Part shown: in pieces, positions 311 to 55,800 of the stretch
Layout of the letters: the number at the start of each line of letters is the position of its first letter
Position numbering within the stretch: the stretch's first letter is position 1
Assembly (NCBI GenBank): GCA_002269645.1
Contig: NIVC01002576.1
Location: 1-58,760, forward strand
Reading direction: 5' to 3'
DNA from: Macrostomum lignano
Lineage: Eukaryota
Length of the DNA stretch: 58,760 bases
Made by a program: the position numbers and the translations under genes
Notes under the pieces: model-generated
The model's input: the letters and a program-made list of their open reading frames with translations, nothing else
The model's database searches: none
What the model was told of the DNA's origin: nothing

Positions 311-12494
<12,184 letters not shown>

Positions 12495-23537: not shown

Positions 23538-24267
<730 letters not shown>

Positions 24268-33215: not shown

Positions 33216-33794
33216 CTCTGCGTCTCCGGCCATTTCCTTTTGATTCCTTTTGCTAGGACACGCAATAATTTTCAGTTAGTTGAAACAATAGCAACCGTAA
33301 ATTTTGTTAAGAATGTCATTACAAAAATTTCTTACACATTTTTCTAAGTTCAAAGTTTCAAAGTTTATCAGCAGATACATGTTATTATTTTAGCTGCGGC
33401 TTCGGTAGTTGATAGCTCGATGTCTTGATTTCTGCAGTGCAGTGTCTGATGGCTTCTAAGTGCCGAGAGAAGCGCGTGCTTATAGTGCAGCGGAGGTGCA
33501 GGCATATCCCATATTTGCACATCAGTTTCTGCATTCACAGCTGCATGAACTCTGGCTAGCATCTAATGGGTGGCTGCTAAGTAAACCTCTAAAATAAACC
33601 TGAGGCAGTCGAGAATTGCAGAACAACGTATTACTCCGGTTTTTAATGCTTGATTTTATGCAAGCAGGAGAGGCTACCACCAAATGTGTATTAAGAGGCT
33701 GAAGACTTCACAGCTGAATAGCTAAGGGGGTAAGTGTACTATAGAGAGATATTAGGAAAGAACGATCCAAAGGAGAGCAGAGGAAAAGAATGGG

Positions 33795-34810
33795 GTGGAG
33801 AGGAGAGGAGAGGAGAGGAGAGGAGAGGAGAGGAGAGGAGAGGAGAGGAGAGGAGAGGAGAGGAGAGGAGAGGAGAGGAGAGGAGAGGAGAGGAGAGAGG
33901 AGAGGAGAGGAGAGGAGAGGAGAGGAGAGGAGAGGAGAGGAGAGGAGAGGAGAGGAGAGGAGAGGAGAGGAGAGGAGAGGAGAGGAGAGGAGAGGAGAGG
34001 AGAGGAGAGGAGAGGAGAGGAGAGGAGAGGAGAGGAGAGGAGAGGAGAGGAGAGGAGAGGAGAGGAGAGGAGAGGAGAGGAGAGGAGAGGAGAGGAGAGG
34101 AGAGGAGAGGAGAGGACAGGACAGGACAGGACAGGACAGGACAGGACAGGACAGGACAGGACAGGACAGGACAGGACAGGACAGGACAGGACAGGACAGG
34201 ACAGGACAGGACAGGACAGGACAGGACAGGACAGGACAGGACAGGACAGGACAGGACAGGACAGGACAGGACAGGACAGGACAGGACAGGACAGGACAGG
34301 ACAGGACAGGACAGGACAGGACAGGACAGGACAGGACAGGACAGGACAGGACAGGACAGGACAGGACAGGACAGGACAGGACAGGACAGGACAGGACAGG
34401 ACAGGACAGGACAGGACAGGACAGGACAGGACAGGACAGGACAGGACAGGACAGGACAGGACAGGACAGGACAGGACAGGACAGGACAGGACAGGACAGG
34501 ACAGGACAGGACAGGACAGGACAGGACAGGACAGGACAGGACAGGACAGGACAGGACAGGACAGGACAGGACAGGACAGGACAGGACAGGACAGGACAGG
34601 ACAGGACAGGACAGGACAGGACAGGACAGGACAGGACAGGACAGGACAGACAGGACAGGACAGGACAGGACAGGACAGGACAGGACAGGACAGGACAGGA
34701 CAGGACAGGACAGGACAGGACAGGACAGGACAGGACAGGACAGGACAGGACAGGACAGGACAGGACAGGACAGGACAGGACAGGACAGGACAGGACAGGA
34801 CAAGACAGGA
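33795..34810. repeat. (AGAGG)n switching to (ACAGG)n, about 1 kb
   Basis: 5-bp periodicity; switch near 34115. Confidence 0.98.
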
Positions 34811-34857
34811 GAGCAGAGGAAAGGAGAGACAAGCAAGCTGCCGTCACGGGCCGTCAG

Positions 34858-37800
34858 TCAGTCTCCATCCCGCCTGTCAGCGCTGGCCCGATGGGGCGGC
34901 AAGGCAGCCGTGCCTCGCAGCCGCAGCCTGAGCGACTGTACGGAGCCGAATCTCGGGCGACCGGCCCTGCTGGACGACTGGAATGAAATCGATTTGATGA
35001 CGATATTGCTAATGCGGGATCGAACTGCTGAGAGATGGGTCTCATGCCTACCTGGTCTTCAATCACTAGCCGCCACTTCCCAGCGGGATTTTCTCCCCAA
35101 AAGTGAACGGTGAGAAATTCCCAGTTTCTGATGCCATCGCTGGATCTGTCTTTGCGGCGCGGGGTCAACAGTTGGCTTCCCGAGCCTGCGAGTGAGCGGA
35201 TTACGGTTGATATGCAGGGTGTAGGATGCAGGATTTTACTGTAGGATGCAGGATTTTACTGTAGGATGCAGGATTTTACTGTAGGATGCAGGATTTTACT
35301 GTAGGATGCAGGATTTTACTGTAGGATGCAGGATTTTACTGTAGGATGCAGGATTTTACTGTAGGATGCAGGATTTTACTGTAGGATGCAGGATTTTACT
35401 GTAGGATGCAGGATTTTACTGTAGGATGCAGGATTTTACTGTAGGATGCAGGATTTTACTGTAGGATGCAGGAGTTTACTGTAGGATGCAGGAGTTTACT
35501 GTAGGATGCAGGAGTTTACTGTAGGATGCAGGAGTTTACTGTAGGATGCAGGAGTTTACTGTAGGATGCAGGAGTTTACTGTAGGATGCAGGATTCTACT
35601 GTAGGATGCAGGAGTTTACTGTAGGATGCAGGAGTTTACTGTAGGATGCAGGAGTTTACTGTAGGATGCAGGAGTTTACTGTAGGATGCAGGAGTTTACT
35701 GTAGGATGCAGGAGTTTACTGTAGGATGCAGGAGTTTACTGTAGGATGCAGGAGTTTACTGTAGGATGCAGGAGTTTACTGTAGGATGCAGGAGTTTACT
35801 GTAGGATGCAGGAGTTTACTGTAGGATATCACCACACGCTACCGGAGGGGGGGGAGATTATTTTCACCAGGGGATGAAGGAATTGAACTAGATGGTGGAG
35901 ATAAAGTTTTTTTGATAATGAGAGGTGTCAGCTTGAGAAGGCAATTTTGCTATAGAGTAGAGGGGGAACGGGAGCATAGGAACCATGGACTACTCAATAA
36001 GAAGGACAGGAGATTACGTTTCTGAGAAAATTTCAGGAGGTAGGTTTTACCGAAAAAATACATTACAAAGATAGGAGGCTTTCATTTTTTCAGCCCAGAA
36101 ATTGTTATTGCTTTTGATAGCAGGCAGACCCAGTGTTCATCTTTTGATATGTTGTGCCTCTCTTATAGCTCTATTGATATTCATAAAGCTTTTTGGTTGG
36201 AAAGATTCTACTGTACATGTAGAATGATAAAATAAACGTGCCATTTTTGTGATTTTCGTGTTAAGCCTAGGGTTAGCGAAGGGGTGATGGGCTGGATCTG
36301 AGGCTCTTGATCTCAGGTTAGGAGAATATACAGGCACAACAACCGTGCTCAGACAGACGGGAGTCTGGTGCAGCTGCTCGTACTCTACTATGCTCACCGG
36401 CTCCTGATGTCAGGTGGATGGCAAGCGCCCCGCGCTCTGAGTAGCGCAAGTCGACTCTCAGCTGTACATGCTCCAGGTACTTCACCGAAGCTGTCTGACT
36501 CTCGCTAACATACAGTGTGCAGTGCAACGACTCTGACTGGCTGATCTGCCTGGAGACATATGAGTATAAATTCATGTATCCCTTGCAGATGCTAAGAGCT
36601 TGTTACGGGATCGTTTTTGTGTTGGTTGCTATGGGACTGTTTTTGTGATGGTTGCTATGGGATCGTTTTTATGATGGTTGCTATGGGATTGTTTTTGGTG
36701 ACGGTTGCTATGGGATCGTTTTTTTGATGGTTGCTATGGCATCGCTTTTTGTGATGGTTGCTATGGGATCGCTTTTTTGATGGTTGCTATGGCATCGCTT
36801 TTTGTGATGGTTGCTATGGGATCGTTGGTGTGATGGTTGCTATGGCATCGCTTTTTGTGATGGTTGCTATGGCATCGCTTTTTGTGATTGTTGCTATGGG
36901 ATCGTTGGTTGGATGGTGTCTTTGTTGCTATGGAAACCACTGGATTGCTATAGTTTCTATCGTTGCCGTGGTTGCTATGGCATCATGTATATGATTGCTA
37001 TGGAACACTGCCTTGTTACGGTTGCTATGGGACCGTGGGCTACAATCAGAATGCTCACCATCTGCCGCCACAGTTCCAGTCGTCCAGTTCCACGGTGGAA
37101 GCGTCGGGCACCCGGCGCCAAGCCGCCGGTTCGGTCAGCCGGATCACCGCCGCCACGTTGAATATCCCGAAGCCGAACCGGTGATGATAGCGGTGCCCGG
37201 CTGCGTTCCGACGCCAGCCGGCGATGCTGCGTCGGCGAAGAGGTGCCGACTGCGACGTCCAGACGACGGCGTGTTGAAAATCGCGCCAGGTCAAATTCGG
37301 ACTTGACGGTGGGAGAATTTGGGATCGTGTGGGATGGGTTATCCCTTTGGGATGGATTATCAGTGTGGGATGGGTTATCCCTTTGGGATGGATTATCAGT
37401 GTGGGATGGGTTTGGGTATGGGATGGGTTTTCAGTGTGGGATGGGTTTTCAGTGTGGGATGGGTTTTCAGTGTGTGATGGGTTTTCAGTGTGGGATGGGT
37501 TTTCAGTGTGTGATGGGTTTTCAGTGTGGGATGGGTTTTCAGTGTGTGATGGGTTTTCAGTGTGGGATGGGTTTTCAGTGTGTGATGGGTTTTCAGTGTG
37601 TGATGGATTTTCAGTGTGTGATGGATTTGGGTATGGGATGGGTTTGGGTATGGGATGGGTTTGGGTATGGGATGGGTTTGGGTATGGTATGGGTTTGGGT
37701 ATGGTATGGGTTTGGGTATGGTATGGGTTTGGGCATGGTATGGGTTTGGGTATGGGATGGGTTTGGGTATGGGATAGGTTTGGGTATGGGATGGGTTTGG

Positions 37801-40800
37801 GTATGGGATGGGTTTGGGTATGGGATGGGTTTGGGTATGGGATGGGTTTGGGTATGGGATGGGTTTGGGTATGGGATGGGTTTGGTTATGGGATGGGTTT
37901 GGGTATGGGATGGGTTTGGGTATGGGATGGGTTTGGGTATGGGATGGGTTTGGGTATGGGATGGGTTTGGGTATGGGATGGGTTTGGGTATGGGATGGGT
38001 TTGGGTATGGGATGGGTTTGGGTATGGGATGGGTTTGGGTATGGTATGGGTTTGGGTATGGGATGGGTTTGGGTATGGGATGGGTTTGGGTATGGGATGG
38101 GTTTGGGTATGGGATGGGTTTGGGTATGGGATGGGTTTGGGTATGGGATGGGTTTGGGTATGGGATGGGTTTGGGTATGGGATGGGTTTGGGTATGGGAT
38201 GGGTTTGGGTATGGGATGGGTTTGGGTATGGGATGGGTTTGGGTATGGGATGGGTTTGGGTATGGGATGGGTTTGGGTATGGGATGGGTTTGGGTTTGGG
38301 TATGGGATGGGTTTGGGTATGGGATGGGTTTGGGTATGGGATGGGTTTGGGTATGGGATGGGTTTGGGTATGGGATGGGTTTGGGTATGGGATGGGTTTG
38401 GGTATGGGATGGGTTTGGGTATGGGATGGGTTTGGGTATGGGATGGGTTTGGGTACCCCCTGCCTCTAGCCTCACTTGGCCTCGAGCGCCAGCGCGGCCA
38501 TGGCTGACACCATCGGTGCCGCAGCCGAGGTGCCGCTGAAGTCGGCTGCGCACTGGTGCCGCAGGTCGGTGGTGACCACCTGCTGCTGGCCGTCCTCGCC
38601 GCTCGAGTAGGCCGCCGTCATCGACGCCGAGCAGTCCTCGGCGTACCAGGGCGACTCCAGGCTCTGACTGACGCTGCTGACCGTCAGGGTGTACATCGAG
38701 GCCGAGTAACCATCGCAGTTGCAGTTGTCGCCGTTGCCGCCGCCGTTGCCCGACGCCCACACGTAGATGGCGCCGAGGCCTCCGCGCCCCTGTTCGGCGC
38801 CAATTTTCAGCGCCTCCCGCGCCAGATCGCCCGGCGCTTCCATGGTGGCGCCGTCGTCGCTGGGGCCCCAGCTGGACGAGTACACGTGCACTCTTGGCAG
38901 CGCGTGGGTGAGGCCGCGCGCCTCGCGCAGGTCGCTGGCGTCGTTCTCGAGAATTTTCACCCCGCTGATGCGGGCATTGAAGGCGACGCCGACCCCGCAG
39001 AAGGAGTTGTTGGCCGTCATGGCTATGACGCCGGAGCAGCGGGTGCCGTGCCTGCAGGTTGTTGATTGTGTTCTTAAGTCTATTATGCACTGTGGTTGCT
39101 ATGGTATCGCTGCTGTGTGTGTCGTAATTGCTATGTATATGCAGTGGTTGCTATGGGACTGTTAGTGTATGTGCGGTGGTTGCTATGGGATCGTTGGTGT
39201 ATGTGTGATGGTTGCTATGGTATCGCTGCTGTGTGTGTCGTAATTGCTATGTATATGCAGTGGTTGCTATGGGACTGTTAGTGTATGTGCGGTGGTTGCT
39301 ATGGGATCGTTGGTGTATGTGTGATGGTTGCTATGGCATCATATATTTAATGTTGGAGCCCCGCTAAGTTGTAAGTTTATTTCATGAATTAGTCTATAAA
39401 ACTTCATTGCACCTGTCACTCACCAGGTCCCGGTTCTGCCGTCCTCTCTGCGGGAGAGATTAAATTAATTGAAACTTATCATGCGCATTTAGAGGTGCAT
39501 TTTAGAATGCACTTCTGGCAGTCACATCTTTTATGCGAGTAGTTAAGATAGTGACTGCTAGAAGTGCATTCTAGGGAGTACATGATTCTGGGATGTACTA
39601 AATCATTGCTGGAGGGCACAGCAGCTCAGTGCCATTCACAGCCATCAAGGCCAACCCCCAAGGCGCAGTGAAGTGTACATGCGTAACGATAAATAAAGTT
39701 AGGGGCCGCTGTACACTCCTGTGTGAGTGTGTGCCTGTGCGTGTGACTGCGTACGTATCCACGCGCTTGTATGCCTGCTCAGGGGAGTCTGCGGAATGGG
39801 CAACAATGCCTCAGCGTTGGTTGCAGGATGAGGTCACCGAAAACGTTGCGCCAGGGTGGCAATTATTCTCGGGGCACTCACAGCTGCTCTCTGTAGTTAA
39901 AGTACACCGGCCTGGGCTCTCTGATGCCTCTCGCATAATCGTAGCTGATCTCAGGATCAAAGGCGCGCACCAGGTCGGGGTGATCGCTCTCAACTCCGTC
40001 GTCAATCACGGCGACCGTGACGCCTTGGCCGGTGAAATTCCACGACCAGACGGTAACCACGCCCATGAGGTCGAGGCGGGGCTCCCGCCTGCTGCTCCTG
40101 GCGTCGTGCAGGTACCACTGCCGCGGCCAGAACGGGTCGATAAACGGCTCGCCACCCGGCGACTCTGGCCGGTTCTGGCCGGTTGAGAATCGAGCCGAGG
40201 AGAACCGGCTTGAACCGGTTTGGACGCCGGGGTATTGCCAGTCTGGCGGGCTCTGGTCCCGGCCTGGGATCTGGCGGCGGATTGGGATAGGAGCATCAGG
40301 ATACCGGGAGAGGCGCTTTCTCTACCGATTGATTTTGGGGTCGGTTGGAATGGGGTCATTGGAATGGGATCATTGGAATGGGGTCATTGGAATGGGGTCA
40401 TTGGAATGGGGTCATTGGAATGGGATCATTGGAATGGGATCATTGGAATGGGATCATTGGAATGGGGTCATTGGAATGGGGTCATTGGAATGAGGTCATT
40501 CAAATGGGGTCATTCAAATGGGGTCATAGAAATTTGGTCATTGGAATGGGGTCATTCAAATGGGGTCATAGAAATGGAGTCATTGGAATGGAGTCATTGG
40601 AATGGAGTCATTGGAATGGGGTCATTGGAATGGAGTCATTGGAATGGAGTCATTGGAATGGAGTCATTGGAATGGAGTCATTGGAATGGAGTCATTGGAA
40701 TGGAGTCATTGGAATGGAGTCATTAGGATGGGGTCATTGGAATGGAGTCATTGGAATGGAGTCATTAAAATGGTGTTATTGGAATGGCGTCATTGAAATG

Positions 40801-42110
40801 GCATCTCGAAAAGGTGTTATGATTATCAAAACATGATTAAATTGCTGCATTTTTAAAGGTCCTGCGTGTGGGTTTCAGAACTTTTCGGATTTCCCTCATC
40901 TCATATCAGCTGACCTCACCTCGCTCAGCTTCAGCAAGTCTCTCTTAGTCCTTTTAGTAGCAGACTGGTAGGAGACCCAAGCAACATCTGGATGCGTGTG
41001 CAGGCTGCGGTTAATCCTGAGCTGCAGCGGAGCCAGCAGGAAATTTCTCCCAACGCTTTGGTTGCCGGACTCGGACAAGCGGAAAATGAATTTGTTCCTC
41101 AGGTAGGGGATCTGCATAATTGCATTTAAGTGGGTAGGAGAACTCGATAAACGATTAGATTTTTCTATCGGTCAGGTGTCTCAGATTTGTTATCAATGAC
41201 TCACCTTTCCTTCGTTAATTAAACCGAGCGAGTCCGCCACCCACTGAGCCACTGGGCTGCCTCCGTCTATTTGTGCCACCCAAATATGCTGGAAACGATG
41301 GGTGTGGGATATTGGGTGTGGGATATTGGGTGTGGGATATTGGGTGTGGGATATTGGGTGTGGGATATTGGGTGTGGGATATTGGGTGTGGGATATTGGG
41401 TGTGGGATATTGGGTGTGGGATATTGGGTGTGGGATATTGGGTGTGGGATATTGGGTGTGGGATATTGGGTGTGGGATAGTGGGTGTGGGATATTGGGTG
41501 TGGGATATTGGGTGTGGGATATTGGGTGTGGGATATTGGGTGTGGGATATTGGGTGTGGGATATTGGGTGTGGGATATTGGGTGTGGGATATTGGGTGTG
41601 GGATATTGGGTGTGGGATATTGGGTGTGGGATATTGGGTGTGGGATATTGGGTGTGGGATAGTGGGTGTGGGATATTGGGTGTGGGATATTGGGTGTGGG
41701 ATATTGGGTGTGGGATATTGGGTGTGGGATAGTGGGTGTGGGATATTGGGTGTGGGATATTGGGTGTGGGATATTGGTGTGGGATAGTGGGTGTGGGATA
41801 GTGGGTGTGGGATAGTGGGTGTGGGATAGTGAGTGTGAGATAGTGGGTGTGGGATAAGGTGGGTTGGATGGTTATTGTTAGATAGGTTGCGTGGGATAGG
41901 TTGCGTGGGATAGGTTGTGTGGGATAGGTTGTGTGGGATAGGTTGCGTGGGATAGGTTGTGTGGGAAAGGTTGTGTGGGATATGTTGTTTTGCATATGGA
42001 AACAATGCACTTACCTCATCGCCCCGAACCAAGGCGGTTTCACTGCTCCAGCCTGTTACCAAGACAGCCAGCAAAAGCTTCACAAAACGGCAGTTCGAAA
42101 GACTAAACAT
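34858..42110 (-). CDS. Kexin/furin-family proprotein convertase (678 aa, 9 exons, no TM or Cys-rich region)
   Basis: Exons 42110-42015, 41288-41205, 41111-40920, 40321-39882, 39051-38476, 37301-37059, 36549-36398, 35185-35052, 34977-34858 total 2037 nt in frame. Signal peptide, prodomain ending RTKR, catalytic VIDDG, HGTRC and GTSAAAP, oxyanion WASGNGG, P domain (LEHVQL...HFWGENPAGKWRLVIED). Subfamily not assignable by eye. Confidence 0.93.
35220..35827. repeat. 20-bp array in convertase intron 7
   Basis: Unit gtaggatgcagga(t/g)tttact. Confidence 0.97.
36600..37035. repeat. About 27-bp array in convertase intron 6
   Basis: Unit gatggttgctatggcatcgctttttgt. Confidence 0.9.
37325..38455. repeat. 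17-bp G-tract array in convertase intron 5
   Basis: Units gggatgggttttcagtgt then gggatgggtttgggtat. Confidence 0.97.
39090..39340. repeat. ggttgctatgg-based higher-order array (period about 117 bp) in convertase intron 4
   Basis: Shares its core with the 36600-37035 array. Confidence 0.88.
39618..39860 (+). mobile_element. 5'-truncated SINE copy
   Basis: ggccaacccccaaggc...tgtgtgagtgtgtgcctgtgcg...ctcaggggagtc...tgcgccagggtgg matches the other two copies. Confidence 0.78.
40345..40800. repeat. 14-bp array in convertase intron 3
   Basis: Unit cattggaatgg(g/a)gt. Confidence 0.95.
41300..41990. repeat. 14-bp array in convertase intron 1
   Basis: Unit gggtgtgggatatt. Confidence 0.96.
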
Positions 42111-42494
42111 TTCGTATCTCTGACAGTGAAGGAGTTGCAAGCGGATTTGGTCTGACGGGACCAGCCAGTCTTATATGTCAGCCGGAGACAGCCGCTCAAG
42201 AAAGTAAATAGGAAATCACCGAACTCTTGTTGAATCAGTTTTTGTGTTTGAGGCAGCTAAGGGTTTGTGTTTGCACTCATTCTGTTTAATACCTTGAGGT
42301 GTTCCGGCAACTCTGTTCACAAATTCGTAAGTTTTTGCGACAGATTTTGTCAAAATGTAACTAATTGTGCCCCATTCTATTAAGTGCTACTTACTAATTG
42401 AAGTCAGTAGTGAATTTAGAAAATTAAACGAATAAAATAAATCAATTTTTTAGAATGTTGGATAAGACTTCACAATTTAAGAATTCTATTACAG

Positions 42495-44768: not shown

Positions 44769-45004
44769 GTCAGAAAATTTGATTTTTTGGTTAATTGATT
44801 TGCTAGTTAGGTTAATCACTGTTGTACTGCTTGCTAATTAATCCACTCCTCAATTATAGCGGTCAATGAGTGACACTAAATGGCTATGAGAATTCAATTT
44901 AACAGTAGTGAGACAGCCGTTTGATGCGATCTAGACTCTTGTGCGTTTGGCTCAGGGATCGGCAAGTTTTTTCTTTAATTTTTGGAGCAGGTAAAGAACC
45001 TAGC

Positions 45005-45720
45005 GAATGAGAAGAGAGCTGAGAAGAGAGAGAGCTGAGAAGAGAGAGAGCTGAGAAGAGAGCTGAGAAGAGAGCTGAGAAGAGAGCTGAGAAGAGAGCT
45101 GAGAAGAGAGCTGAGAAGAGAGCTGAGAAGAGAGCTGAGAAGAGAGCTGAGAAGAGAGCTGAGAAGAGAGCTGAGAAGAGAGCTGAGAAGAGAGCTGAGA
45201 AGAGAGCTGAGAAGAGAGCTGAGAAGAGAGCTGAGAAGAGAGCTGAGAAGAGAGCTGAGAAGAGAGCTGAGAAGAGAGCTGAGAAGAGAGCTGAGAAGAG
45301 AGCTGAGAAGAGAGCTGAGAAGAGAGCTGAGAAGAGAGCTGAGAAGAGAGCTGAGAAGAGAGCTGAGAAGAGAGCTGAGAAGAGAGCTGAGAAGAGAGCT
45401 GAGAAGAGAGCTGAGAAGAGAGCTGAGAAGAGAGCTGAGAAGAGAGCTGAGAAGAGAGCTGAGAAGAGAGCTGAGAAGAGAGTTGAGAAGAGAGCTGAGA
45501 AGTGAGCTGAGAAGAGAGCTGAGAAGAGAGCTGAGAAGAGAGCTGAGAAGAGAGCTGAGAAGAGAGCTGAGAAGAGAGCTGAGAAGAGAGCTGAGAAGAG
45601 AGCTGAGAAGAGAGCTGAGAAGAGAGCTGAGAAGAGAGCTGAGAAGAGAGCTGAGAAGAGAGCTGAGAAGAGAGCTGAGAAGAGAGCTGAGAAGAGAGCT
45701 GAGAAGAGAGCTGAGAAGAG
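45005..45720. repeat. (CTGAGAAGAGAG)n 12-bp array
   Basis: About 59 near-perfect copies. Confidence 0.98.
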
Positions 45721-45721
45721 A

Positions 45722-45822
45722 CGCAAACCTTGAGCGGGCCGGATTGCTATGGGAAGTTTCAAAGGATCCGAGGGCCGGCTAGAGAGCATGTGGCCCGCGG
45801 GGCCGGAGTGTGCCAACCCCTG
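45722..45822. mobile_element. hAT/Charlie-like MITE end, related to the sequence at about 19715-19800
   Basis: ...ggcccgcggggccggagtgtgccaacccctg terminus; shares gattgctat.gaagtttcaaagga.ccga.gg.c.g.tagagag with the 19.7-kb segment. Confidence 0.4.
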
Positions 45823-46045
45823 ATTCAGATAGATAAGAACAGTGTGGTCAATGCCGGGCCAATTACCGCATAGGAAAGCTCTGATTGGCTGAGAGTTCGC
45901 CCCCCCGTCCACTTCAGTACCGGCTTTCAATGTCTTCCACAGATAAACCACTGGCCCAGTCAAGCCGTCACTTCTCTCTGGTCTGGGTGAGATCTCTTCG
46001 ATTCAGAAGATTCCAATTAGCAATCTCTAGACAGGGACAACCGCG

Positions 46046-48519
46046 ATGAAGTCGCAGGAGTCTGACTCGGCCGACACAGACGGATCGGAGGCTGCATCGG
46101 CGACGAGATCAACAGACTCGAATGTCTGGCGAATCCGCCGAATCAACTTCGTGATTGGCGTTGCGGTGCTCTGCTGGATCGTGGCGGCTTGTCCGTATGC
46201 GGATGGGTGAGTAGAATTTAGGGAGGGTTAAAATAGAATTTGGGAAGAGTTTGAGAATGTAGGGATAATGGCATAATACATATATATTTACAATGTAGGG
46301 TAAATTTTATAGTGCTTTGGAAGTAGATCTGAGTATAGGGATTAACGGTATTGGGTAGAACAGAGCTTAAACTTACTTAAGAATCAGACAAAATCTTCCC
46401 AAACTCTGGAATTCGCAGAAGCATATTCGGCTACAAAAGCTCCGGCAGGCGAGACCCGGCAAGCAGCGGCAGCGACGGCGTCGGTAGCGACTCCGACAGC
46501 GACCGATTCAATGCGCAAACTTTTCTCCACTTTCTCACGACAAGTCGGGAGGCCATGTGCGGCATTGTCGGCGGTGTCGGTGGTGTCGGCGGTGTTGGCG
46601 GTGTTGGCGGCGGTGTCGGCGGTGTCGGCGGTGTCGGCGGTGTCGGCGGTGTCGGCGGTGTCGGTGGTGTCGGCAGGGTCAGTGGCGATGTCGGCGATGT
46701 TGGAAGTGGTGTCAGTGTTGTCGGCGGCGGCAGCGGCGGCGAGCTGTCGGTGCCGGGCAGTCGCCAGGCGGCCTACTGCCGCGAGGCCAGCCTATCAGAC
46801 CAGTTTGTGCACATCGGCCTGTCCAATGGCTACAAAATCTGTCAATCGATGTTTCGCAACGAGCGCTGGAATTGCACTTTTGCTGCGCCGTTTCTTAACT
46901 CGGGTGAGCTGGTATGAACCATAAGCCAATGGTAAACAAAAGTCAATTAGCAACCACAAGGAACCATTGGAAGCCACAGGAAACCATTGGCAACCACAGA
47001 AAGCCATTGAAAACTACAGGAAACCATTGGAAACCACAGAAAGCCATTGAAAACCACAGGAAACCATCGAAAACCACAGGAAACCATTGGCAAATACAAG
47101 CAACCATAGGCCTAAAATTTCTAAAAATGAGCGCATAATTGCCATTCCAACTCCTCCTCAGGATATCCGCAGGCGGCCTTTGTATGGGCCATCTCGGTCA
47201 GCAAAGCCATCGAGGAGCTGGTCATGGCCTGTCGCCGCGGCGTCCCCGGCCTCAACTGTCCGTGCCACCAGACGCCCCGTCAGCGAGTCGGCCGAAGAAA
47301 CAAAGACCAACAGCGCCAGAATCGACGCAAGAATCGGCGCAAAAACCGGCGCCAGAATCGACGCCGCAGACCGAACGATCGTCGAGAGCGACCGCGTCGA
47401 AGCATCGCGCTGGGCAAAGAGCAGCTGAAGATGCTGAACCCGGAGAAGATCAGCGAGAAGTACGGTAACCTGAATGTGCCCACCTGTGACGACAACATCG
47501 CGCTGGCCAGCCAGAGGGTTCGACAGTTCTTCAGCGACTCGCGCGGATTCGCGCCGGACATGAATTTTATCGAGAAAGTCAACTTTCACAACAGACGGGC
47601 GGGTCACATTGTGAGTTGCGCTCGTTCAAAGATTACTCAGCCAGCCAGCCAGCACAAGGGGGGTGGGGCGCAAAAACTAACGGAAGAACAATTAATAAGG
47701 GAAAGGGAAATAGGGCTAAGGGAAAGCAAGCTTGGTGCGATACCCACTTCCCATCCCTGACGTTCCAAAAGTACGTACATGTATCTATGCACTTTCAAGA
47801 CTGCTTGCGTTGCCGCACGCAAGTTCAGATTATAGCTAACAAACACACTAAAGTGCACAACTTTGAAGGCTTAATAAACGCCAGAAAAGGGACCTGAGCA
47901 CCTAAGCACACGCACCAATCTGCAGGTGGTTAAGCGCAGTCGCATCAGCATCTGCAACTGTCTGGGCATCTCCGGCTCCTGCTCCAAGCGAATTTGCATC
48001 AAAGGCCTTCGCCGACATTCGCGCCGCATCGAGAGCAACCTGCAGAAGCTATTCGTCAAATCCAAGCACGTCCTGCCGCCGGCTGTCATTCAGCAGCTTC
48101 TGTCGCCGTCGGTCTCGACTTCGTCCACCGGAGCAGCATCCTCGACAGACAAGCGTCGGATCGGCCGGCGTCGCATGGCGTCGCAGCTTTTCTACCACGA
48201 CGAGCGGCAGCGTCGAGTAAAACGGGTGCGCAAGAAGCTGCTGGTGTACACCAACCAGCCGCCGGACTTCTGCCAGCGCAACGAGCTGGCCGGCTACTAC
48301 GGAGTTGACGAGCGGCTCTGCAACGTGACTGTGCCGCGCAGCAATCACAGGTCGTGCACTCACCTGTGCTGCGGCAACCGGAATCACCGGGTTGAGTATC
48401 ACTACAAGACCGACTGGTGCAATTGCGCAATGCGCTACAATCCAATCAAGGTGGTCTGCCAGCGATGCGAACAGCAAATCGAGCTGCACAGATGCCTCGT
48501 GCGCCGCGTGTTCTCGTAG
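46046..48519 (+). CDS. wnt: Divergent Wnt ligand (562 aa, 4 exons)
   Basis: Exons 46046-46206, 46419-46903, 47162-47610, 47926-48519 in frame. Motifs: CQSMFRNERWNC, AAFVWAIS...AC, CDDNI, NFHNRRAG, CNCLGISGSC, LVY...PDFC, C...CCG, CNC...CQRC...C. Subfamily unassigned. Confidence 0.9.
46940..47110. repeat. Degenerate 10-bp array in Wnt intron 2
   Basis: Units aaaccattgg/aaaccacagg. Confidence 0.85.
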
Positions 48520-49435
48520 GGACCACCGACACAGCCTCCCCAGATCCCAGATCCCGCCTCTCTCATCGCCTCAGTTCGAATTCTACCGGCATCTTAGCGC
48601 GCGGTGTTTCCCTTAGATACGATTTTGCAAACCCCGATTATCGACGCTTTTTCGGTAGATTTCCCCTCGAGTTAAAGCTTTGCTAGACCTGCTCCCGTTC
48701 TTGCCTTGCGCACAAGCCTAGCGAGTGTTGCTATAGGTTTAGCTGTAGGTTCGTATCCATGGGAACATTCTTTGCCCTTGAATTTGCTTACGCTCACTGT
48801 AACTTGTCTGTCTACAGCTCGTCATAAAACGTCATCCGTGATTCGAATTGCCCCCCCCCCCCAAACTTCATGATCTCATTATGGCTACTGATGGGCAATT
48901 TTGGGCCCGTTCCATTGTTAATTGCTTGTCTACCTCATCCACTTACCTAATGCAGAACTGTTAGTATGCTGTAAATACAGAATGACAGACTGTTTAAGAC
49001 AGCCTCTACATCTATCTATCCTGAACGCAAACATTTTGAAGTAACTTGTGAATGCATGCTTAACAGCGGCACTGCAATGCCGTGTGGGACTTTTTTGTAC
49101 CTAAAATAGCGGGACAGCCGCAAAATGTTCAGCCTCTATAAGTCAACCGCTGCAGCTGAAACTGTACTTGCTTTTATTGTACTGGCAGTGCTGCTAGATA
49201 TTGCGGGGCCACTGTACATGTGTACAAAGCACGTCTGTGTGTTGCAAAGCGCATGGCCCTCCTTCAACTTTTCGCTCTTGATAATATGCTGCTGCCATTG
49301 CTCTTGACTCTATTCAATAAAGCCGCACCGAACTCTGCTGGGCGAATATCTTTGCCCAATATGGCCTCGAAATGGCCATTGCTTTTGCTATACACTCTAC
49401 ACTTCGGATAACTGCTAATACACTGCTGCCTTTTG

Positions 49436-50003
<568 letters not shown>

Positions 50004-51357
50004 GGCATGCATAGGCTGTTCGATAATGCGTCTCTATTGATAAAAGCCAGCGGGAATCCCAGAGCATCGCTGCGGTATTCAGAGCCACTCGAGCAGCACT
50101 CGCCCATCTCTCGCCCATTCCCCATTTCCAGTCGACTGCCTCCTGGGGGATATGGGAGCCGGCACAGCCGGTCTCTCTGAGCTCTGGGTAGGCAGTTTAC
50201 TGAAAAAATCTCCATATTTTAGCAGTCGCGATTCGACAGGCTAAAAGCATGACAATTTGTTCAAAATAGCCCGGGGCTCTGGCCGCAGAAAATCCTTCCC
50301 AATCCCGGGTCTCATCGAGAGCATTAGACAGTATTGACAAGCTCTCACAGAGATATCCATCTGTACATGGACAAAGTCTGCCGAGCCCCTTGGTTAACCA
50401 GCAACACTGGGCCAATTATGAATTGAGCGAATAACTTGGACCTGCCCCTGGCACACCAGTCAATCAATCAGTCTGGGACTGGGCCTGTGTGTATACTGTC
50501 TGAGCCCTGTGTTTAGATCTATTCTAGCGAGTGGGCATTGCGGCCAGACTATTTCTCTATATGGCGAACTGTTTGCCTAGGCAGGGTCGGGCCCCGGCCC
50601 CCTCCAGGCTTTCAGGCTCGTGTTTTTCTTTCTGTCATTCTTTCTCTCTCTCTCTCTCTCTCCGGTTCCCTTCTCGCCAAGACCCTAAGAAAGGCGAAAA
50701 GGAGGTTGGTTGGCTATCCACTGACAGGGACTTCTCGGACTAGAGATCTGGATAGGAAAACCAACGCTTACTAAATAGGTATCCGTCTAATATACCTTTA
50801 CGATCCGCGGTAAACTCTTGCGCCACAGACTCGCAGATACTCCAGTCCAGATATCGAGCTCCTAGACGTCCATGCCCTCCTAGCCCTGTCTTGCCAGTTA
50901 AAAGGATAGGATAAGCAATGGAATAGTGTCTAGAAGTCTGCCCCTTCGGGGGGGGGGGGGTGCGGACCCACTTGGCGAAAGTCAACACTCTGCCCCGGCT
51001 CTAGGGGGGGGGGTGAATTTGACAGGCTTTGATTGACACCTGCCAATCTAGCTTGTAGTCGCACTGGCGGACGCAAGCTCTGACCCCGCGGGCCATTCTC
51101 AGCTCAATTCATGGAGCAGCAAAGGAGGGTCAGTGGCAGACAGGCTGATTGCATAATTCTGTTGAGCTGAGTCAGGTTTTTAAAATAACTGAACCGAGAC
51201 AAGTCAAGCAAGGCCCAGAGCTGGCAAATTTTGAATTCGTGTCTAAAATTGATAATTCACGAACCAGGTGGGGACGCAGGCACAGAAAAGTTCGTACAAG
51301 TTTTGTTTTTAAGTTGAACAACGTTGACGCATTTCACCAGACTTTAATCAGACTTCA

Positions 51358-52600: not shown

Positions 52601-52822
52601 TGCCCTTCTGCGGTCTTTTCTATTCTCTGGTAAGTTTATATCACAGAAGTCCCTGATAATTTTTAACAAGACCATCAACAAGAAGCTCAGAGATCGCATT
52701 GTCTATGGCATTTCCATTTTCAGCCTTGCTCGAACGCACCGAGTTCAATGCAGTTTTCGCCAGGAAAGCGAATTGGGGTAAAACAGACGTCAAAAGGCAA
52801 CAATCGCATTGTCAGAATAATC

Positions 52823-55800
52823 ATGAGCTCAACCGAAGTCAACGAACTATTCGTCCTGATCAGCCCGCCATCGCCTGACGCCAACACGAACGCGAACGAC
52901 GGCGTGCTGCAAGAGAGTCTCAGCAGCAGCGCCAGCGGCGGCAGCAACGGTCAGCGCCTCGAGTGCGGCTGCCCGCGCTACCGGCCTCGCGTACCGGAAG
53001 TGCAGAGCGTTGTGACGAGCGTCAGCCTGTCGCACTCGGTAGTGCAGGACCCCAACCGGGTGCTGGCGCAGCTGCCGAAGCAGCGCAAGAGGCCGGAGGA
53101 GCGGCTGTTCCTGCTGGACGCCTGGCTCCGCCGGCCGGCCCTGTATTACACTAGCGAGCTCATCCACGCCTTCATCGATGCGTTCAGCCCGCTACGCCTG
53201 CCAGCTGGCAAGAGGCTCATTCGCGAACGGGACCCCATCAAGCAGTGCTACCTGGTCTACAAAGGCCAGCTCAGGGCGTTGCGCAGTCACCCGGCGCCCT
53301 GCGGCCTGCAGTACCAGACCGGACTGCTTGAGTGCGGAGCCGAGCTGTTCTTTGACCCGCTGTGCATCGGCCAGGCCTCCCAGTTCAGCTGCGTGGCCGC
53401 CGAGGACTCGCTGCTGTTCTCCCTCGGCTTGAAGGACCTCGGCGGTTTGACGGCCGCGGCCAATGAGATCCGCCGGGGCGCCTTTCTCGAGTGCCTTCGC
53501 AGCATCAAGTACCTGCGGCCGCTGCCCGCTAGAGAGCTGCACGCCCTGGCTGAGAGCTGGGACGAGCCGTTAAAGGTGCGAATAGGAATTGTTAGTCTCA
53601 GTATCAATATATTGTTAATAGTGTGTTCAAAATTTTCCATGAAAGTTTTTAAAGTTGTCATTTACAGGCCGCAAAAGCATCCAAAGTAAATTTTCACGAT
53701 TCAAGAAGTGCATGGTAAATTAATCTATAAGAGTTTAAAAAGTTCAACATTTTTCTTGATAGTAGTAAACTACTACTAGTAGGATGATGCAAAAATTAAA
53801 AACTGCAGACCTACGACTACGAAGCCGGCTACGTGCTGCAAGAGGAAGGCTCGGTGCCCGACCGGCTCTTCTGCATCCTGCAGGGCGGAGTCAGCCTGAC
53901 CGACTCTCGCGGCTTCTCAGCGCGCCGCGGCGCCGGCCGGACAGTCTGCTGCCAGGCGCTGCTCCGCCTGCCGTCGCCCTACACCGCTACAGTCGAGGAG
54001 CTTTCAACTCTAGTCAGCCTTGAAGTCGGCCTGTGCCCCGATCGATCTTCAACCAGCTGATTGAGGATTCCGAAGCGCTGGAGCGCGCCTCCGAAGAGCT
54101 CCGCTCTGAATTGACCCGCGACGAAGAGGAGGCTGCAGCAGCCGCGGCCGCCGCGGCCGATGCCGAGCAGATTGCCGAGGCCGCCGCTGCCGCCGAGGCC
54201 GAGCAAGCCCGGAGCAGGCTGAACCTGCCAGCCATTCACCGACGCTCCGTGCTGCGCCTGTGCCGAGTTCCGCAGCTCAGCGGCCTCCTGCGGCCAACTG
54301 AACTGGACGGCCTCTTCGGCGACCGGGTGCAGATGGCGACGCATATTTTGACGCTACAGAAAAATGACTGCCTTTACGCAGAGGGCATCGACTACGCGAA
54401 GTATGTGTACGTTGTACTGGAAGGCGAGCTGCGCGAGACGGCGCCGGTGGGGCCGGACGGGTCGCACGCCCTGCTGGGAATCGTCAGGCGCGGCGGCTGC
54501 GCCTGCCTGGAGTCGCTGCTGCTTCAGAGCGCCTGCCACTGCCAGCGTTCCGCCTACGCCAACACGGCCTGCACGGTGGTTGCGCTGGACGTCGATGCCA
54601 TGGAGGAGGGCCTCTGCCGCAGTTTCATCTCGGTGATGAAGCGAAGAACGGAGACGTTCCGTCGGTGTGTTGGCGCTGCCCAGCTGACAGCGGTAGACGA
54701 GGATCGAGCCTTCCGGGACGAGGTGTTTCCGCCGACTAGGGACGAGCTCCTGAGCAGCGAGCAAAGCGGCGGTCTGCCAGCCGGCCGGGACGAGCTCACC
54801 TTCAAGGCCTTGGCGGTGATGCGCTTGGTGGCTGCCCAGATTCAACAGATGCTGGAGCCCCTTGGCGATGATGTTCTGACTGCGAGCGAACTGAGGTCAC
54901 TGCGGCTTTGCCATCGGGCGGTTATTCTGGGCGGCCGTGGCGGCGGCCGATTCTCCGACGGAGACCTGATGGTCACAGAGGAGGCCTCGCGCAGGCGGAT
55001 CATCTACTTCTTGCAGAGCGGCGAGGCGGAGGTGACTCACACAGCGCGCTGCGGCGGTGGAAGCGGCTGCATCTCGCAGGTTTGAAATATCATTGAAGCC
55101 CAATTGAAACTCGCAGGAACTCTCGGGAAATCTCTCTATATTTTTCAGGAACGGACAGAGACTCGCCCGGCTGGCAGTCTGCTGTGCCCCGAGCAGCTCT
55201 ACCTGCCGGCCGTGTGCTGCTTCGAAGCTCGCGCGAAGCAGGACGGCACGGAGCTCGCCTTAGTCAATCAGCACGTCCTTGAGACGGCAATTGGCTGCGA
55301 ATTTCGCGACATTTTCCTGCGCCGGCCGGACGCTTTTCGAGCCTACCTGGCGGCCAGGTACCCCAGCGCAGCGGAGGCCGACCTGCAGCTGCTAACCGCC
55401 GCAGCATCGGCCGAGTCGTTGCCAGCGGCTGCTGGCAGAGTCTACGCCTTCGGCCTTGAAGCCCTGATGTGCCATCAGCAAGTGGGACGGCTGTTCACCG
55501 ACCGCGAGCTGCAGAGGCTGAGGGCCAGCCAAGCCAGCATAATGTCGTGCATCGATGAGAAGCAGCCGAACCAGAGCATCTTCTTGGAGGTGGGCGAACG
55601 GTTAAACAGACATTCTTTTGTGCATTCTTTCGTCGTATCCTTATCAGACACGCACGAGCTATGAACTCCAACAGCTTCCTTTTCTCTCTTTTCAATCAGA
55701 TAAAATGAGTCACTGTGTCTTGATGCGACTGAACAAGGAACCTGCATTAGTGACCACAGTACCCAATATTCTTGCCCCTTTAGCTCATATTCTGAGCTCT

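What the first reader, a model, noticed from the sequence alone, without database searches (positions are those of the whole stretch)
47953..48500. Wnt keeps the lipidated Ser but has lost the index-finger WCC tip
The thumb reads CNCLGISGSCSKRIC (acylation Ser at 47971 kept; CKCH and TCW altered). The finger reads CNCAMRYNPIKVVCQRC instead of CxCxFxWCCxVxCxxC, removing the disulfide and the aromatic residues that form Frizzled contact site 2 in the Wnt8-Fz8 structure. WGGC is also replaced (VPTC), leaving 22 Cys in the mature region. Such a ligand may bind Frizzled through lipid only, act as an antagonist or decoy, or use another receptor.
Basis: partly seen in the sequence, partly recalled or inferred. 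Interest (0 to 1): 0.72.

Follow-up and report, generated by a model that had tools for sequence, protein, structure and literature searches.

The report
Divergent flatworm Wnt with rewired finger
This is an intact gene for a very divergent Wnt signalling protein of a Macrostomum-type flatworm that keeps the fatty-acid attachment site but has swapped the almost universal Trp-Cys-Cys tip of its receptor-binding finger for a conserved Tyr-Asn-Pro turn, which is a lineage-specific variant and not a broken gene.

Summary
A four-exon gene (46046-48519, + strand) encodes a 562-aa Wnt (Pfam wnt, E 7e-46). The thumb reads CNCLGISGSCSKRIC, with the acylation Ser codon at 47971-73. The finger reads CNCAMRYNPIKVVCQRC. 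Of the 24 canonical Cys positions, 22 are kept and only the tandem Cys-Cys is lost.

This is not decay. The only close relatives among 1.84 billion representative proteins are two Macrostomum lignano paralogue groups (43-46% identity). They share the same NPI(K/R)V tip, Leu for the thumb His, and the altered hairpin 1. The new tip is among the most conserved segments of the clade (5/8 invariant against 34% overall). M. lignano gene copies show few non-synonymous changes.

The clade has no affinity to any Wnt subfamily. It probably matches the 'WntM' group of a 2026 preprint, which does not mention the finger.

Conservation of the tip argues for a re-specified contact surface, not a lost one. 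All three are replaced here, while the acylation core is kept.

Tandem-Cys loss recurs in about 3% of other divergent Wnts. Verdict: a new variant of a known kind, of moderate interest.

The parts
46046..46206 (+). Exon 1: ATG, a 31-residue hydrophilic start, then the hydrophobic stretch INFVIGVAVLCWIVAAC (probable signal peptide or anchor). GT donor at 46207.
   Evidence: ORF list; splice model with GT/AG at every junction. The N-terminal architecture parallels M. lignano P0001/P0002, and their exon 1 ends at the aligned position.
46419..46903 (+). Exon 2: Gly-Val coding repeat (46566-46674), the first two conserved Cys (C101, C174), and ...CQSMFRNERWNCTF...FLNSG.
   Evidence: TRF period-9 array. 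tblastn/tblastx matches to the M. lignano Wnts end at the same FLN(T/S)G junction.
47162..47610 (+). Exon 3: GYPQAAFVWAIS...ACRRG...CPC, an Arg/Asn/Lys-rich coding repeat (47314-47365), remodelled hairpin 1, and VNFHNRRAGHI.
   Evidence: The intron position after GH(I/L) is shared with the M. lignano genes.
47458..47487 (+). Hairpin 1 remnant K315-Y-G-N-L-N-V-P-T-C324, in place of the canonical (K)WGGC of the WxWGG motif.
   Evidence: K315, Y316, G317, P322 and C324 are invariant in the clade. The canonical Trp column (94% W) is aligned to Y316.
47926..48519 (+). Exon 4: thumb, basic linker, C-terminal domain, finger and stop codon (48517-19), all in one open frame.
   Evidence: The same last-exon layout is seen in M. 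lignano group B.
47953..47997 (+). Thumb / hairpin 2: C375-N-C-L-G-I-S381-G-S-C-S-K-R-I-C389. Acylation Ser codon 47971-73. Gly379 and Gly382 are kept; canonical K, H, T and the following W are replaced by N, L, I and I390.
   Evidence: His 120/126 and Trp 112/126 in other Wnts. 10 of 15 residues are invariant in the clade.
48076..48240 (+). Linker between the N- and C-terminal domains (residues 416-470): Ser/Thr-rich, then strongly basic (RRIGRRR, RQRRVKRVRKK). Poorly conserved except R465, V466, K468.
   Evidence: 9/39 invariant. AF2 pLDDT is about 59-75 there.
48322..48330 (+). N-glycosylation sequon N498-V-T just after C497, at the canonical C-N-x-T/S position.
   Evidence: CNVT / CNNS / CNAT in the three lineages. 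The canonical consensus CNxT appears.
48418..48468 (+). Index finger / hairpin 3: C530-N-C-A-M-R-Y-N-P-I-K-V-V-C543-Q-R-C546. The tip M534-V541 is 48430-48453. N537-P538 (48439-44) replace the tandem Cys, and the tip is one residue longer.
   Evidence: tip 5/8 invariant. The AF2 hairpin has strands 424-441 and 444-460 in model numbering (+95 for protein numbering), with the turn at N537-P538 and pLDDT 93-97.

Best explanation
The window carries an intact, selectively maintained gene for a member of a Macrostomum-restricted, very divergent ('orphan') Wnt clade.

Shown:
- It is a Wnt by sequence and by predicted fold.
- It keeps 22 of the 24 family cysteines.
- It keeps the acylation core of hairpin 2: both hairpin disulfides and G-x-S-G.
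- The tips of all three hairpins are rewritten in a way shared by the whole clade. Hairpin 1 WxWGGC becomes KYG plus five residues before the Cys. In the thumb, K, H, T and W become N, L, I and I. In the finger, F-x-W-C-C becomes M-x-Y-N-P-I-K.

Inferred:
- The protein is secreted and palmitoleoylated by Porcupine on S381, and it still inserts this lipid into a Frizzled CRD groove (site 1).
- The vicinal disulfide that makes the tight finger turn has been cleanly replaced by an Asn-Pro turn. The doubly stapled beta-hairpin and the Val equivalent to Wnt3a V337 are left in place.
- Because the new tip is as conserved as the thumb, it is a working contact surface. It has probably been re-specified for co-evolved partners: one of the expanded Macrostomum Frizzleds at site 2, and the luminal pockets of Wntless during export. 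It is probably not a dead surface.
- The most likely role is a lineage-specific, probably short-range, Wnt agonist with narrowed partner specificity.
For: - Family: Pfam wnt 157.6 bits against a cut-off of 20.3. phmmer finds PDB Wnt5a/7a/3/3a/8. The AF2 model built with a 49-sequence alignment has pTM 0.73, and Foldseek matches Wnt3, Wnt7a and XWnt8 at target-normalised TM 0.70-0.75.
- Gene integrity: four exons, GT-AG at every junction, no stops. Intron positions are shared with annotated M. lignano genes.
- Cysteines: 22 of 24 canonical columns kept; only the tandem pair is lost, so no Cys is left unpaired.
- Clade: an exhaustive HMMER profile search of 1.84 billion representatives finds only M. 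lignano proteins above 140 bits, and the next hits are at 115 bits or less. The three lineages are monophyletic in 200/200 NJ bootstraps. All share LG(I/V)SGSC, NPI(K/R)V and KYG...P(T/S)CDDN.
- Constraint: 141/410 columns are invariant overall (34%), against 5/8 in the finger tip and 10/15 in the thumb. M. lignano copies show dN/dS 0.175 (8 non-synonymous, 15 synonymous) in group A, and 0 non-synonymous against 2-4 synonymous in group B. Between lineages dS exceeds 1.1.
- Function of the affected residues in mammalian Wnts:
  - S209A and G210R abolish Fz8 binding.
  - W333A nearly abolishes Fz8-CRD pull-down.
  - C335A kills the reporter, yet W333A and C335A still act in zebrafish.
  - V337 is critical (all PMC4068752).
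  - WCC, the WxWGG tryptophans and H206 are needed for WLS-dependent surface delivery and release, while only G207T blocks lipidation (PMC13434646).
- Macrostomum has multiple Frizzled paralogues and lineage-specific Wnts (preprint 10.64898/2026.07.29.741434). M. lignano also has canonical WCC Wnts such as P0021, so this clade is an addition to the repertoire.
Against: - There is no transcript, expression or functional evidence for this gene or its M. lignano relatives.
- Acylation is inferred only from motif retention. The thumb His, whose Ala mutant of Wnt3a is not delivered to the cell surface, is Leu here.
- AF2 with the clade-only alignment failed (mean pLDDT 32). The confident finger hairpin therefore leans on canonical Wnts in the alignment and is not independent evidence that the Asn-Pro tip folds as drawn.
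- Co-evolution with a Frizzled or with Wntless was not examined, because no Macrostomum Fz or WLS sequences were retrieved.
- The dN/dS values rest on very few substitutions (homeologues) or on saturated dS (0.44-0.52 between lineages).
- One lineage (group B) has Ser instead of Tyr at the Trp position.
Confidence: 0.55

Rival explanations
1. One reading: site 2 is functionally lost. The protein holds Frizzled through the lipid only and acts as a weak ligand, competitive antagonist or decoy.
For: The Trp and tandem Cys that fill the Fz8 pocket are gone. In Wnt3a, W333A nearly abolishes Fz8-CRD pull-down and C335A abolishes reporter activity (PMC4068752). V337R shows that a Wnt can bind without signalling (same paper).
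Against: The replacement tip is conserved more strongly than the protein average across saturated divergence. The hairpin staples and V541 are kept. Tyr is a natural variant at the Trp position in WCC-bearing Wnts. No direct data.
Confidence: 0.15
2. The finger has been re-targeted to a non-Frizzled receptor or co-receptor (Ror, Ryk/Derailed, PTK7, glypican). The lipid thumb serves membrane or carrier association.
For: There is a conserved novel tip. The linker is strongly basic and suited to proteoglycan binding. There is no affinity to any canonical subfamily.
Against: Nothing specific points to any alternative receptor, and none was searched for. The S-G lipidation core that serves Fz site 1 is intact.
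Confidence: 0.15
3. The rewiring chiefly concerns export. With hairpin-1 Trp, thumb His and WCC all changed, the protein is poorly handled by Wntless and stays cell-bound (juxtacrine), or it uses a co-evolved or alternative export route.
For: PMC13434646 reports that W150A, W152A, H206A and W333A of mWnt3a are lipidated or expressed normally but fail surface delivery and carrier-mediated release. The corresponding positions here are E/Q, Y, L and Y/S.
Against: Two of the Trp changes are to Tyr, which may still fill the hydrophobic pockets. Earlier studies found hairpin 3 dispensable for secretion (PMC10112924). Macrostomum Wntless was not examined. This reading is compatible with the best explanation and not exclusive of it.
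Confidence: 0.2
4. It is a pseudogene or a decaying duplicate.
For: Divergence from canonical Wnts is very high (about 25% identity; identical at 51 of the 73 columns that are at least 75% conserved among canonical Wnts). Two coding microsatellite expansions are present. The gene lies in a repeat-rich neighbourhood with transposon ORFs.
Against: The 562-codon frame is open across four exons with canonical splice sites. All 22 remaining Cys are kept. The derived motifs are shared by three lineages. M. lignano copies have few non-synonymous differences.
Confidence: 0.03
5. It is a sequencing, assembly or gene-model artefact: a frameshift or a missed exon hides a normal WCC finger.
For: None was found.
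Against: The finger is flanked in frame by the conserved W-C-x-C and C-x-x-C...H-R-C. The identical NPI motif occurs in five M. lignano loci from another assembly. tblastn with seven Wnts finds no other finger-like exon in 58.7 kb.
Confidence: 0.02

Closest known systems
Macrostomum lignano 'Protein Wnt' genes. Group A: BOX15_Mlig015547g1 / Mlig003032g1 (PAA83956.1, PAA74702.1; UniProt A0A267GD83, A0A267FP07). Group B: BOX15_Mlig029070g1 / Mlig033752g1 / Mlig007946g1 (PAA90069.1; A0A267GXP9, A0A267ETA4).
   Same: They share the derived characters: CxCLG(I/V)SGSC thumb, I after the thumb, KYG...P(T/S)CDDN hairpin 1, GYPQ for G-x-RE, NPI(K/R)V finger, 22 Cys and a basic linker. Intron positions are the same. 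The three lineages are monophyletic in 200/200 bootstraps.
   Different: Identity is only 43-46% at the protein level and dS is saturated. The window gene is a third, roughly equidistant lineage, weakly sister to group A (139/200). Its Gly-Val and Arg-Asn-Lys coding repeats are its own. Group A has an extra intron in the linker. These proteins are annotated only as hypothetical or 'Protein Wnt', and no finger anomaly is recorded.
'WntM', the macrostomorph-specific Wnt ligands of Gasiorowski, Tripathi, Bavafaye Haghighi & Rink 2026 (bioRxiv 10.64898/2026.07.29.741434)
   Same: They are described as multiple Macrostomum (M. cliftonense, M. hystrix) Wnts that fall into no bilaterian Wnt family. 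That is exactly the behaviour of this clade in my searches.
   Different: Identity with WntM could not be verified because the preprint's sequences are not held. The paper also reports two divergent 'Wnt1' copies in Macrostomum, which cannot be excluded as the match. It says nothing on cysteines, lipidation or the finger.
Canonical Wnt ligands with solved structures (XWnt8-Fz8 4F0A, Wnt3-Fz8 6AHY, Wnt3a/Wnt7a/Wnt8a/Wnt5a-WLS)
   Same: The two-domain fold is the same (TM 0.70-0.75). The protein has 11 of the disulfide-forming Cys pairs, the acylation Ser-Gly in a doubly bridged hairpin 2, a long doubly stapled finger hairpin, the CNxT glycosylation sequon and RWNC.
   Different: It lacks the tandem Cys-Cys and the Trp of the finger tip, the WxWGG tryptophans and the thumb His/Thr/Trp. 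It also carries three large low-complexity inserts: N-terminal GV repeat, basic repeat in the N-terminal domain, and basic linker.
Other divergent Wnts that independently lost the tandem Cys: Sycon ciliatum SciWntM (CDO67900.1), Clavelina lepadiformis 'Wnt-6-like' orphan (XP_076822536.1), Notodromas monacha CAG0912581.1
   Same: The tandem Cys-Cys in the finger is lost, while the flanking C-x-C and C-x-x-C are kept.
   Different: The tip sequences are unrelated (RRRFPWPV, KLQKSLNLV, NFSWDVTRVV), they belong to unrelated lineages, and none shares the Macrostomum thumb or hairpin-1 changes. The Clavelina protein also has Cys in place of the acylation Ser.
Drosophila WntD
   Same: It is a naturally occurring Wnt that departs from the family's rules for lipidation and Wntless dependence (PMC10112924).
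   Different: The pattern is the opposite. WntD lacks the lipid and is secreted without Wntless, whereas this protein keeps the lipidation core and changes the protein contacts.

Membership tests
Wnt family (Pfam PF00110) | Significant match to the family profile over the whole domain | tested here: met
   157.6 bits, E 6.9e-46, residues 168-555 on profile positions 7-304 of 305; gathering cut-off 20.3.
Wnt family (Pfam PF00110) | Invariantly spaced set of 22-24 cysteines | tested here: met
   22 of 24 canonical Cys columns are occupied in the window and in all M. lignano copies. Only the tandem pair is missing. XWnt8-type Wnts also have 22 Cys (own knowledge).
Wnt family (Pfam PF00110) | Tandem Cys-Cys preceded by Trp at the tip of hairpin 3 (WCC) | tested here: not met
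   Y536-N537-P538 replaces it. WCC or xCC is present in 110 of 113 other representatives. This is a near-universal feature but not a defining one, since three other bona fide Wnts lack it.
Wnt family (Pfam PF00110) | Acylation serine in the doubly disulfide-bridged hairpin 2 (CxCHGxSGxC...C) | tested here: met
   C375-x-C377-L-G379-I-S381-G382-S-C384-x4-C389. Ser, both Gly and all four Cys are kept; His is replaced by Leu. Actual lipidation is not testable here.
Wnt family (Pfam PF00110) | Two-domain fold: helical saposin-like N-terminal domain plus cystine-knot-like C-terminal beta-hairpin | tested here: met
   AF2 pTM 0.73, with core and finger pLDDT above 90. Foldseek gives 6AHY, 8TZO and 4F0A at E about 1e-13 and TM (target) 0.70-0.75. 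Caveat: the clade-only alignment gave no usable model.
Wnt family (Pfam PF00110) | Secretory signal at the N-terminus | tested here: inconclusive
   A hydrophobic stretch at residues 33-49 follows a 31-residue hydrophilic start. The layout is similar in P0001 and P0002. No signal-peptide predictor was available.
Wnt family (Pfam PF00110) | Binding to a Frizzled CRD; Porcupine- and Wntless-dependent biogenesis | not testable with these tools
   Requires biochemistry or complex modelling. Only single chains could be modelled.
A named bilaterian Wnt subfamily (Wnt1-11, 16, A) | Phylogenetic grouping with, or preferential similarity to, members of one subfamily | tested here: not met
   The best non-clade hits are a mixture named Wnt-2b, -5, -6, -7, -11 and -16-like. 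The clade is roughly equidistant (0.74-0.76) from all of them and joins other long-branch orphans in an NJ tree. No outside sequence prefers the clade profile.
'WntM' (Gasiorowski et al. 2026) | Membership of the macrostomorph-specific clade in their ML tree | not testable with these tools
   The sequences and tree labels are not held. The description fits.
Lipid-free Wnts (WntD type) | Absence of the acylation serine | tested here: not met
   S381 and its G-x-S-G context are present and invariant in the clade.
Processed or unprocessed pseudogene | Frameshifts or stops, loss of splice sites, relaxed constraint | tested here: not met
   The frame is open with GT-AG introns. Introns sit at positions conserved with M. 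lignano. Cys and tip motifs are conserved. Homeologue dN/dS is at most 0.18.

The most novel reading that the evidence does not exclude
The clade is not a peripheral orphan. It is the Macrostomum counterpart of the divergent flatworm 'Wnt1': the preprint reports two Wnt1 copies, and two M. lignano paralogue groups exist here. In M. lignano, wnt-1 marks the posterior pole and the posterior blastema. In that case beta-catenin-dependent posterior patterning in these animals would be driven by a Wnt that lacks the WCC finger tip, the WxWGG tryptophans and the thumb His. It would then be a natural demonstration that Frizzled site 2 and the Wntless hairpin pockets can be completely re-coded together with their partners.
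Probability: 0.15. Interest if true: 0.65.

Novelty: new variant of a known kind. Interest (0 to 1): 0.4.

Why it matters
The WCC finger tip, the WxWGG hairpin and the thumb His are among the most conserved residues of all Wnts. Mutagenesis of mammalian Wnts makes them look indispensable for Frizzled site-2 binding and for Wntless-mediated export.

This flatworm clade has replaced all of them with a new, conserved set of residues while keeping the lipidation core. That makes it a natural experiment on which Wnt contacts are truly obligatory and how ligand, receptor and transporter co-evolve. It also gives a ready-made pair of alternative tips for testing what sets Wnt-Frizzled specificity.

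For flatworm evo-devo, it gives a structural meaning to the lineage-specific Wnts recently reported in Macrostomum, a transgenic and RNAi-tractable regeneration model.

The finding is not unique in kind. About 3% of other representative Wnts have also lost the tandem Cys. The interest is therefore moderate, not high.

Tried and rejected
- Synteny with M. lignano. tblastx/blastn of the window against 10 kb on either side of Mlig029070g1 (L001) and Mlig015547g1 (L002) matched only the Wnt exons plus low-complexity repeats. Orthology could not be settled this way.
- Taxon assignment from a neighbouring conserved gene. The subtilase exon (38475-39020) hit proprotein convertases of many animals at about 55% identity and gave no taxon signal.
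- Third protein search with the clade profile, to obtain named flatworm hits. Low-complexity words swamped the candidate list and only P0001 came back. This search was wasted.
- Subfamily assignment. The NJ tree, a profile contrast and naming of 30 representatives gave no affinity. No ML program and no named flatworm Wnt1/Wnt11 reference set were available.
- Sequences from the 2026 preprint, the M. lignano wnt-1 paper and Koziol 2016. None are held as supplements.
- AF2 with the three-sequence clade alignment as an independent check of the finger. The result was unusable, with mean pLDDT 32. An earlier 70-sequence job was lost on the server.
- Search for a hidden canonical finger exon or a second Wnt in the window. 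None was found.
- dN/dS between the three lineages. dS is saturated (above 1.1), so the 0.44-0.52 ratios are not interpretable. Only the M. lignano homeologue comparisons were used.
- Pseudogene and artefact readings were considered and rejected (see the rival explanations).
Full report
**1. What is in the sequence**

The stretch 47953-48500 lies in the last exon of a four-exon gene on the + strand. The exons are 46046-46206, 46419-46903, 47162-47610 and 47926-48519. Every junction is GT-AG, and the frame is open for 562 codons.

- Exon 1 gives a hydrophilic start followed by a hydrophobic stretch, probably a signal peptide.
- Exon 2 carries a Gly-Val coding repeat and the RWNC motif.
- Exon 3 carries ACRRG...CPC, an Arg/Asn/Lys coding repeat, hairpin 1 and HNRRAG.
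- Exon 4 carries thumb, linker, C-terminal domain and finger in one uninterrupted frame.

The product matches Pfam wnt at 157.6 bits (cut-off 20.3). It also matches the solved Wnt5a, Wnt7a, Wnt3, Wnt3a and Wnt8 chains.

**2. Check of the observation**

- The thumb is CNCLGISGSCSKRIC, with the Ser codon at 47971-73.
- The finger is CNCAMRYNPIKVVCQRC, from 48418 to 48468.
- VPTC (47476-87) sits where WGGC is expected.

I aligned the protein to 66 canonical Wnts. It occupies 22 of the 24 conserved Cys columns, and only the tandem pair is missing. The 100% figure for that pair in this alignment is by construction, because I selected CC-bearing sequences.

The unbiased count uses 113 non-Macrostomum representatives with a complete finger. 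Of these, 110 have the tandem Cys and 3 do not.

- The Trp position holds Tyr, which is the second commonest residue there in other Wnts (9 of 110). The Phe position holds Met. The Val equivalent to Wnt3a V337 is kept.
- The tip is one residue longer than canonical.
- An invariant K-Y-G aligns with the K-W-G of WxWGG and is followed by a five-residue insertion. Hairpin 1 is therefore remodelled, not deleted.

The window contains no second Wnt and no spare finger exon.

**3. Relatives**

A word-indexed search of 5.8 billion proteins returned only two hits, both from Macrostomum lignano, at 47% and 42% identity.

An exhaustive HMMER profile search of 1.84 billion representatives confirmed this. 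Only these two proteins, plus frameshifted fragments of them, score above 140 bits. The next hits, at 115 bits or less, are ordinary WCC Wnts.

Cluster look-ups resolve the hits into two M. lignano paralogue groups:
- Group A: Mlig015547g1 and Mlig003032g1.
- Group B: Mlig029070g1, Mlig033752g1 and Mlig007946g1.

All copies share the derived characters: LG(I/V)SGSC, Ile after the thumb, KYG...P(T/S)CDDN, GYPQ for G-x-RE, and M-x-(Y/S)-N-P-I-(K/R)-V. The four-exon layout and intron positions are the same, and group A has one extra intron in the linker.

The three lineages are monophyletic in 200/200 NJ bootstraps. The window gene is weakly sister to group A (139/200). All three pairwise identities are 43-46%.

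The window therefore comes from a Macrostomum-type flatworm. It is either a species far from M. lignano or a third paralogue. Flanking synteny gave no answer.

**4. No subfamily**

The nearest outside sequences carry names such as Wnt-2b-, -5-, -6-, -7-, -11- and -16-like, and come from arthropods, molluscs, vertebrates, a rotifer and a jellyfish.

The clade is roughly equidistant from all of them and joins other long-branch orphans in an NJ tree. No outside sequence prefers the clade profile to a general Wnt profile.

A July 2026 preprint reports that M. cliftonense and M. hystrix have 'multiple copies of macrostomorph-specific Wnt ligands (WntM)', besides Wnt5, Wnt11 and two divergent Wnt1 copies. 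It does not mention cysteines, lipid or the finger. The clade most probably corresponds to WntM. I could not verify this or exclude the divergent 'Wnt1', because no sequences are held.

M. lignano also has canonical WCC Wnts, for example P0021 with CKCKFEWCCKIHC.

**5. Is it functional?**

- The frame and splice sites are intact, and all remaining Cys are kept.
- Across the three lineages 34% of aligned columns are invariant. The thumb has 10/15 invariant and the finger tip (M534-V541) 5/8. The inserts and the linker are nearly free to vary.
- Between M. lignano copies, group A shows 8 non-synonymous against 15 synonymous differences (dN/dS 0.175). Group B shows 0 against 2-4. The numbers are small but point the right way.
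- Between lineages dS is saturated, so those ratios say nothing.

**6. Structure**

AF2 with a 49-sequence alignment gives pTM 0.73 and pLDDT above 90 for the helical core. It predicts a long finger hairpin (protein residues 519-536 and 539-555) with the turn exactly at N537-P538. Foldseek matches Wnt3, Wnt7a and XWnt8 at target-normalised TM 0.70-0.75.

With the clade-only alignment the prediction collapsed to pLDDT 32. The finger geometry therefore leans on canonical homologues and is not independent evidence.

Removing both tandem Cys leaves no unpaired Cys. An Asn-Pro pair is a classical turn former (own knowledge). The two cross-strand disulfides (C530-C546 and C532-C543, by homology with Wnt3a 327-342 and 329-339; own knowledge of the UniProt annotation) remain.

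**7. What the changed residues do in other Wnts**

- The finger tip of XWnt8 is the tandem disulfide Cys320-Cys321 plus Trp319, which sits in a pocket of Fz8 (PMC6040091).
- In Wnt3a, S209A and G210R abolish Fz8 binding.
- W333A nearly abolishes Fz8-CRD pull-down, and C335A kills the TCF reporter.
- F331A, W333A and C335A nevertheless still act in zebrafish embryos.
- V337 is the most critical site-2 residue (all PMC4068752).
- A 2026 Wnt5a-WLS study shows that WCC sits in a hydrophobic cavity of the Wntless luminal domain.
- In that study W333A, the hairpin-1 mutants W150A and W152A, and the thumb mutant H206A are expressed but fail surface delivery and carrier-mediated release. Lipidation was confirmed in every mutant assayed except G207T. 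K204A, T216A and W218A reduce both read-outs (PMC13434646).

Mapped onto the window protein, the kept positions are G207, S209, G210, V337 and all the hairpin disulfides. The replaced positions are:

| Wnt3a residue | Window protein |
|---|---|
| W150 | E |
| W152 | Y |
| K204 | N |
| H206 | L |
| T216 | I |
| W218 | I |
| F331 | M |
| W333 | Y |
| C334-C335 | N-P |

The acylation core is conserved, while every protein contact at the three hairpin tips is rewritten, and rewritten the same way in the whole clade.

**8. Interpretation**

The best-supported reading is a bona fide, lipid-modified, lineage-specific Wnt ligand. Its partner-contact surfaces have been re-specified together with their partners: Frizzled site 2 and the Wntless pockets.

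Shown: family membership, gene integrity, the clean loss of one disulfide, the clade-wide conservation of the new residues, and the restriction to Macrostomum.

Inferred: lipidation, Frizzled binding through the lipid, use of the new tip as a contact, and co-evolution.

The pseudogene and artefact readings are disfavoured.

**9. Novelty**

The M. lignano relatives are already in databases as unnamed 'Protein Wnt'. A macrostomorph-specific Wnt group has just been described in a preprint. Tandem-Cys loss has happened independently in a calcisponge (SciWntM), an ascidian orphan Wnt and an ostracod Wnt.

I did not find the following described anywhere:
- the coordinated, conserved rewriting of all three hairpin tips with retention of the acylation core;
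- its bearing on the recent Wntless data.

I file the finding as a new variant of a known kind, with interest 0.4.

Noticed in passing
window 46566-46674 and 47314-47365: Two microsatellite-like arrays lie inside the Wnt coding sequence. A period-9 array encodes about 35 residues of Gly-Val repeat before the Wnt domain. A period-12 array encodes RRKNRRKNRRQNRR in the loop before hairpin 1. Neither is shared with the M. lignano relatives, so both are probably recent expansions and possibly length-polymorphic.
   Followed up: partly
window 46952-47111: Intron 2 of the Wnt gene is largely a 20-bp tandem repeat (AACCACAGGAAACCATTGGA, about 7 copies).
   Followed up: no
window 15778-16926 (+): An uninterrupted 382-codon ORF has Mos1/mariner-type HTH_48, Transposase_1 and DDE_3 matches. 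It is a possibly still intact mariner transposase.
   Followed up: partly
window 31109-32493 (-): These ORFs have RNase H and RT-like matches. They are a fragment of a retroelement inserted between the lectin and the subtilase genes.
   Followed up: partly
window 38475-39020 (-): This is an exon of a kexin/furin-type proprotein convertase (Peptidase_S8, E 5e-24). The best database hits are about 55% identical PCSK-like proteins from many animal phyla. It lies about 7 kb upstream of the Wnt, whose linker carries dibasic and RxKR-like motifs. The proximity is probably a coincidence.
   Followed up: partly
window 26495-26977 (+): A single-exon ORF has an N-terminal hydrophobic signal and a C-type lectin domain.
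   Followed up: partly
window 21984-22250 (+), continuing to about 23000: A globin-domain exon runs in frame into a long His-Pro-Ser-rich minisatellite. The reading frame after the globin part is probably intronic repeat and not protein.
   Followed up: partly
window 52748-55664 (+): Three consecutive long ORFs carry at least two cyclic-nucleotide-binding domains. They are a multi-cNMP-domain gene downstream of the Wnt.
   Followed up: partly
window 11772-12494 (+): This is the C-terminal lobe of a protein kinase domain, followed by a Gln/Ala-rich tail. The start of the ORF is a duplicated 30-residue unit.
   Followed up: partly
window-wide, e.g. 725-1234, 23355-24424, 33700-35100, 37240-38500, 41190-42140, 44899-45963, 49372-50040: The load of long micro- and minisatellite arrays is exceptionally heavy. 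These arrays generate most of the long spurious ORFs on both strands.
   Followed up: no
protein P0018 (Clavelina lepadiformis XP_076822536.1), not in the window: This ascidian orphan Wnt has lost the tandem Cys of the finger (CNCKLQKSLNLVCQEC). It also has Cys in place of the acylation Ser (CKCHGLCGSC), so it is a more extreme departure than the window protein.
   Followed up: no
L002 12987-13580 and L003 6220-6733 (M. lignano group A genes): Group A relatives have an additional intron inside the linker region. It is absent from the window gene and from group B.
   Followed up: partly
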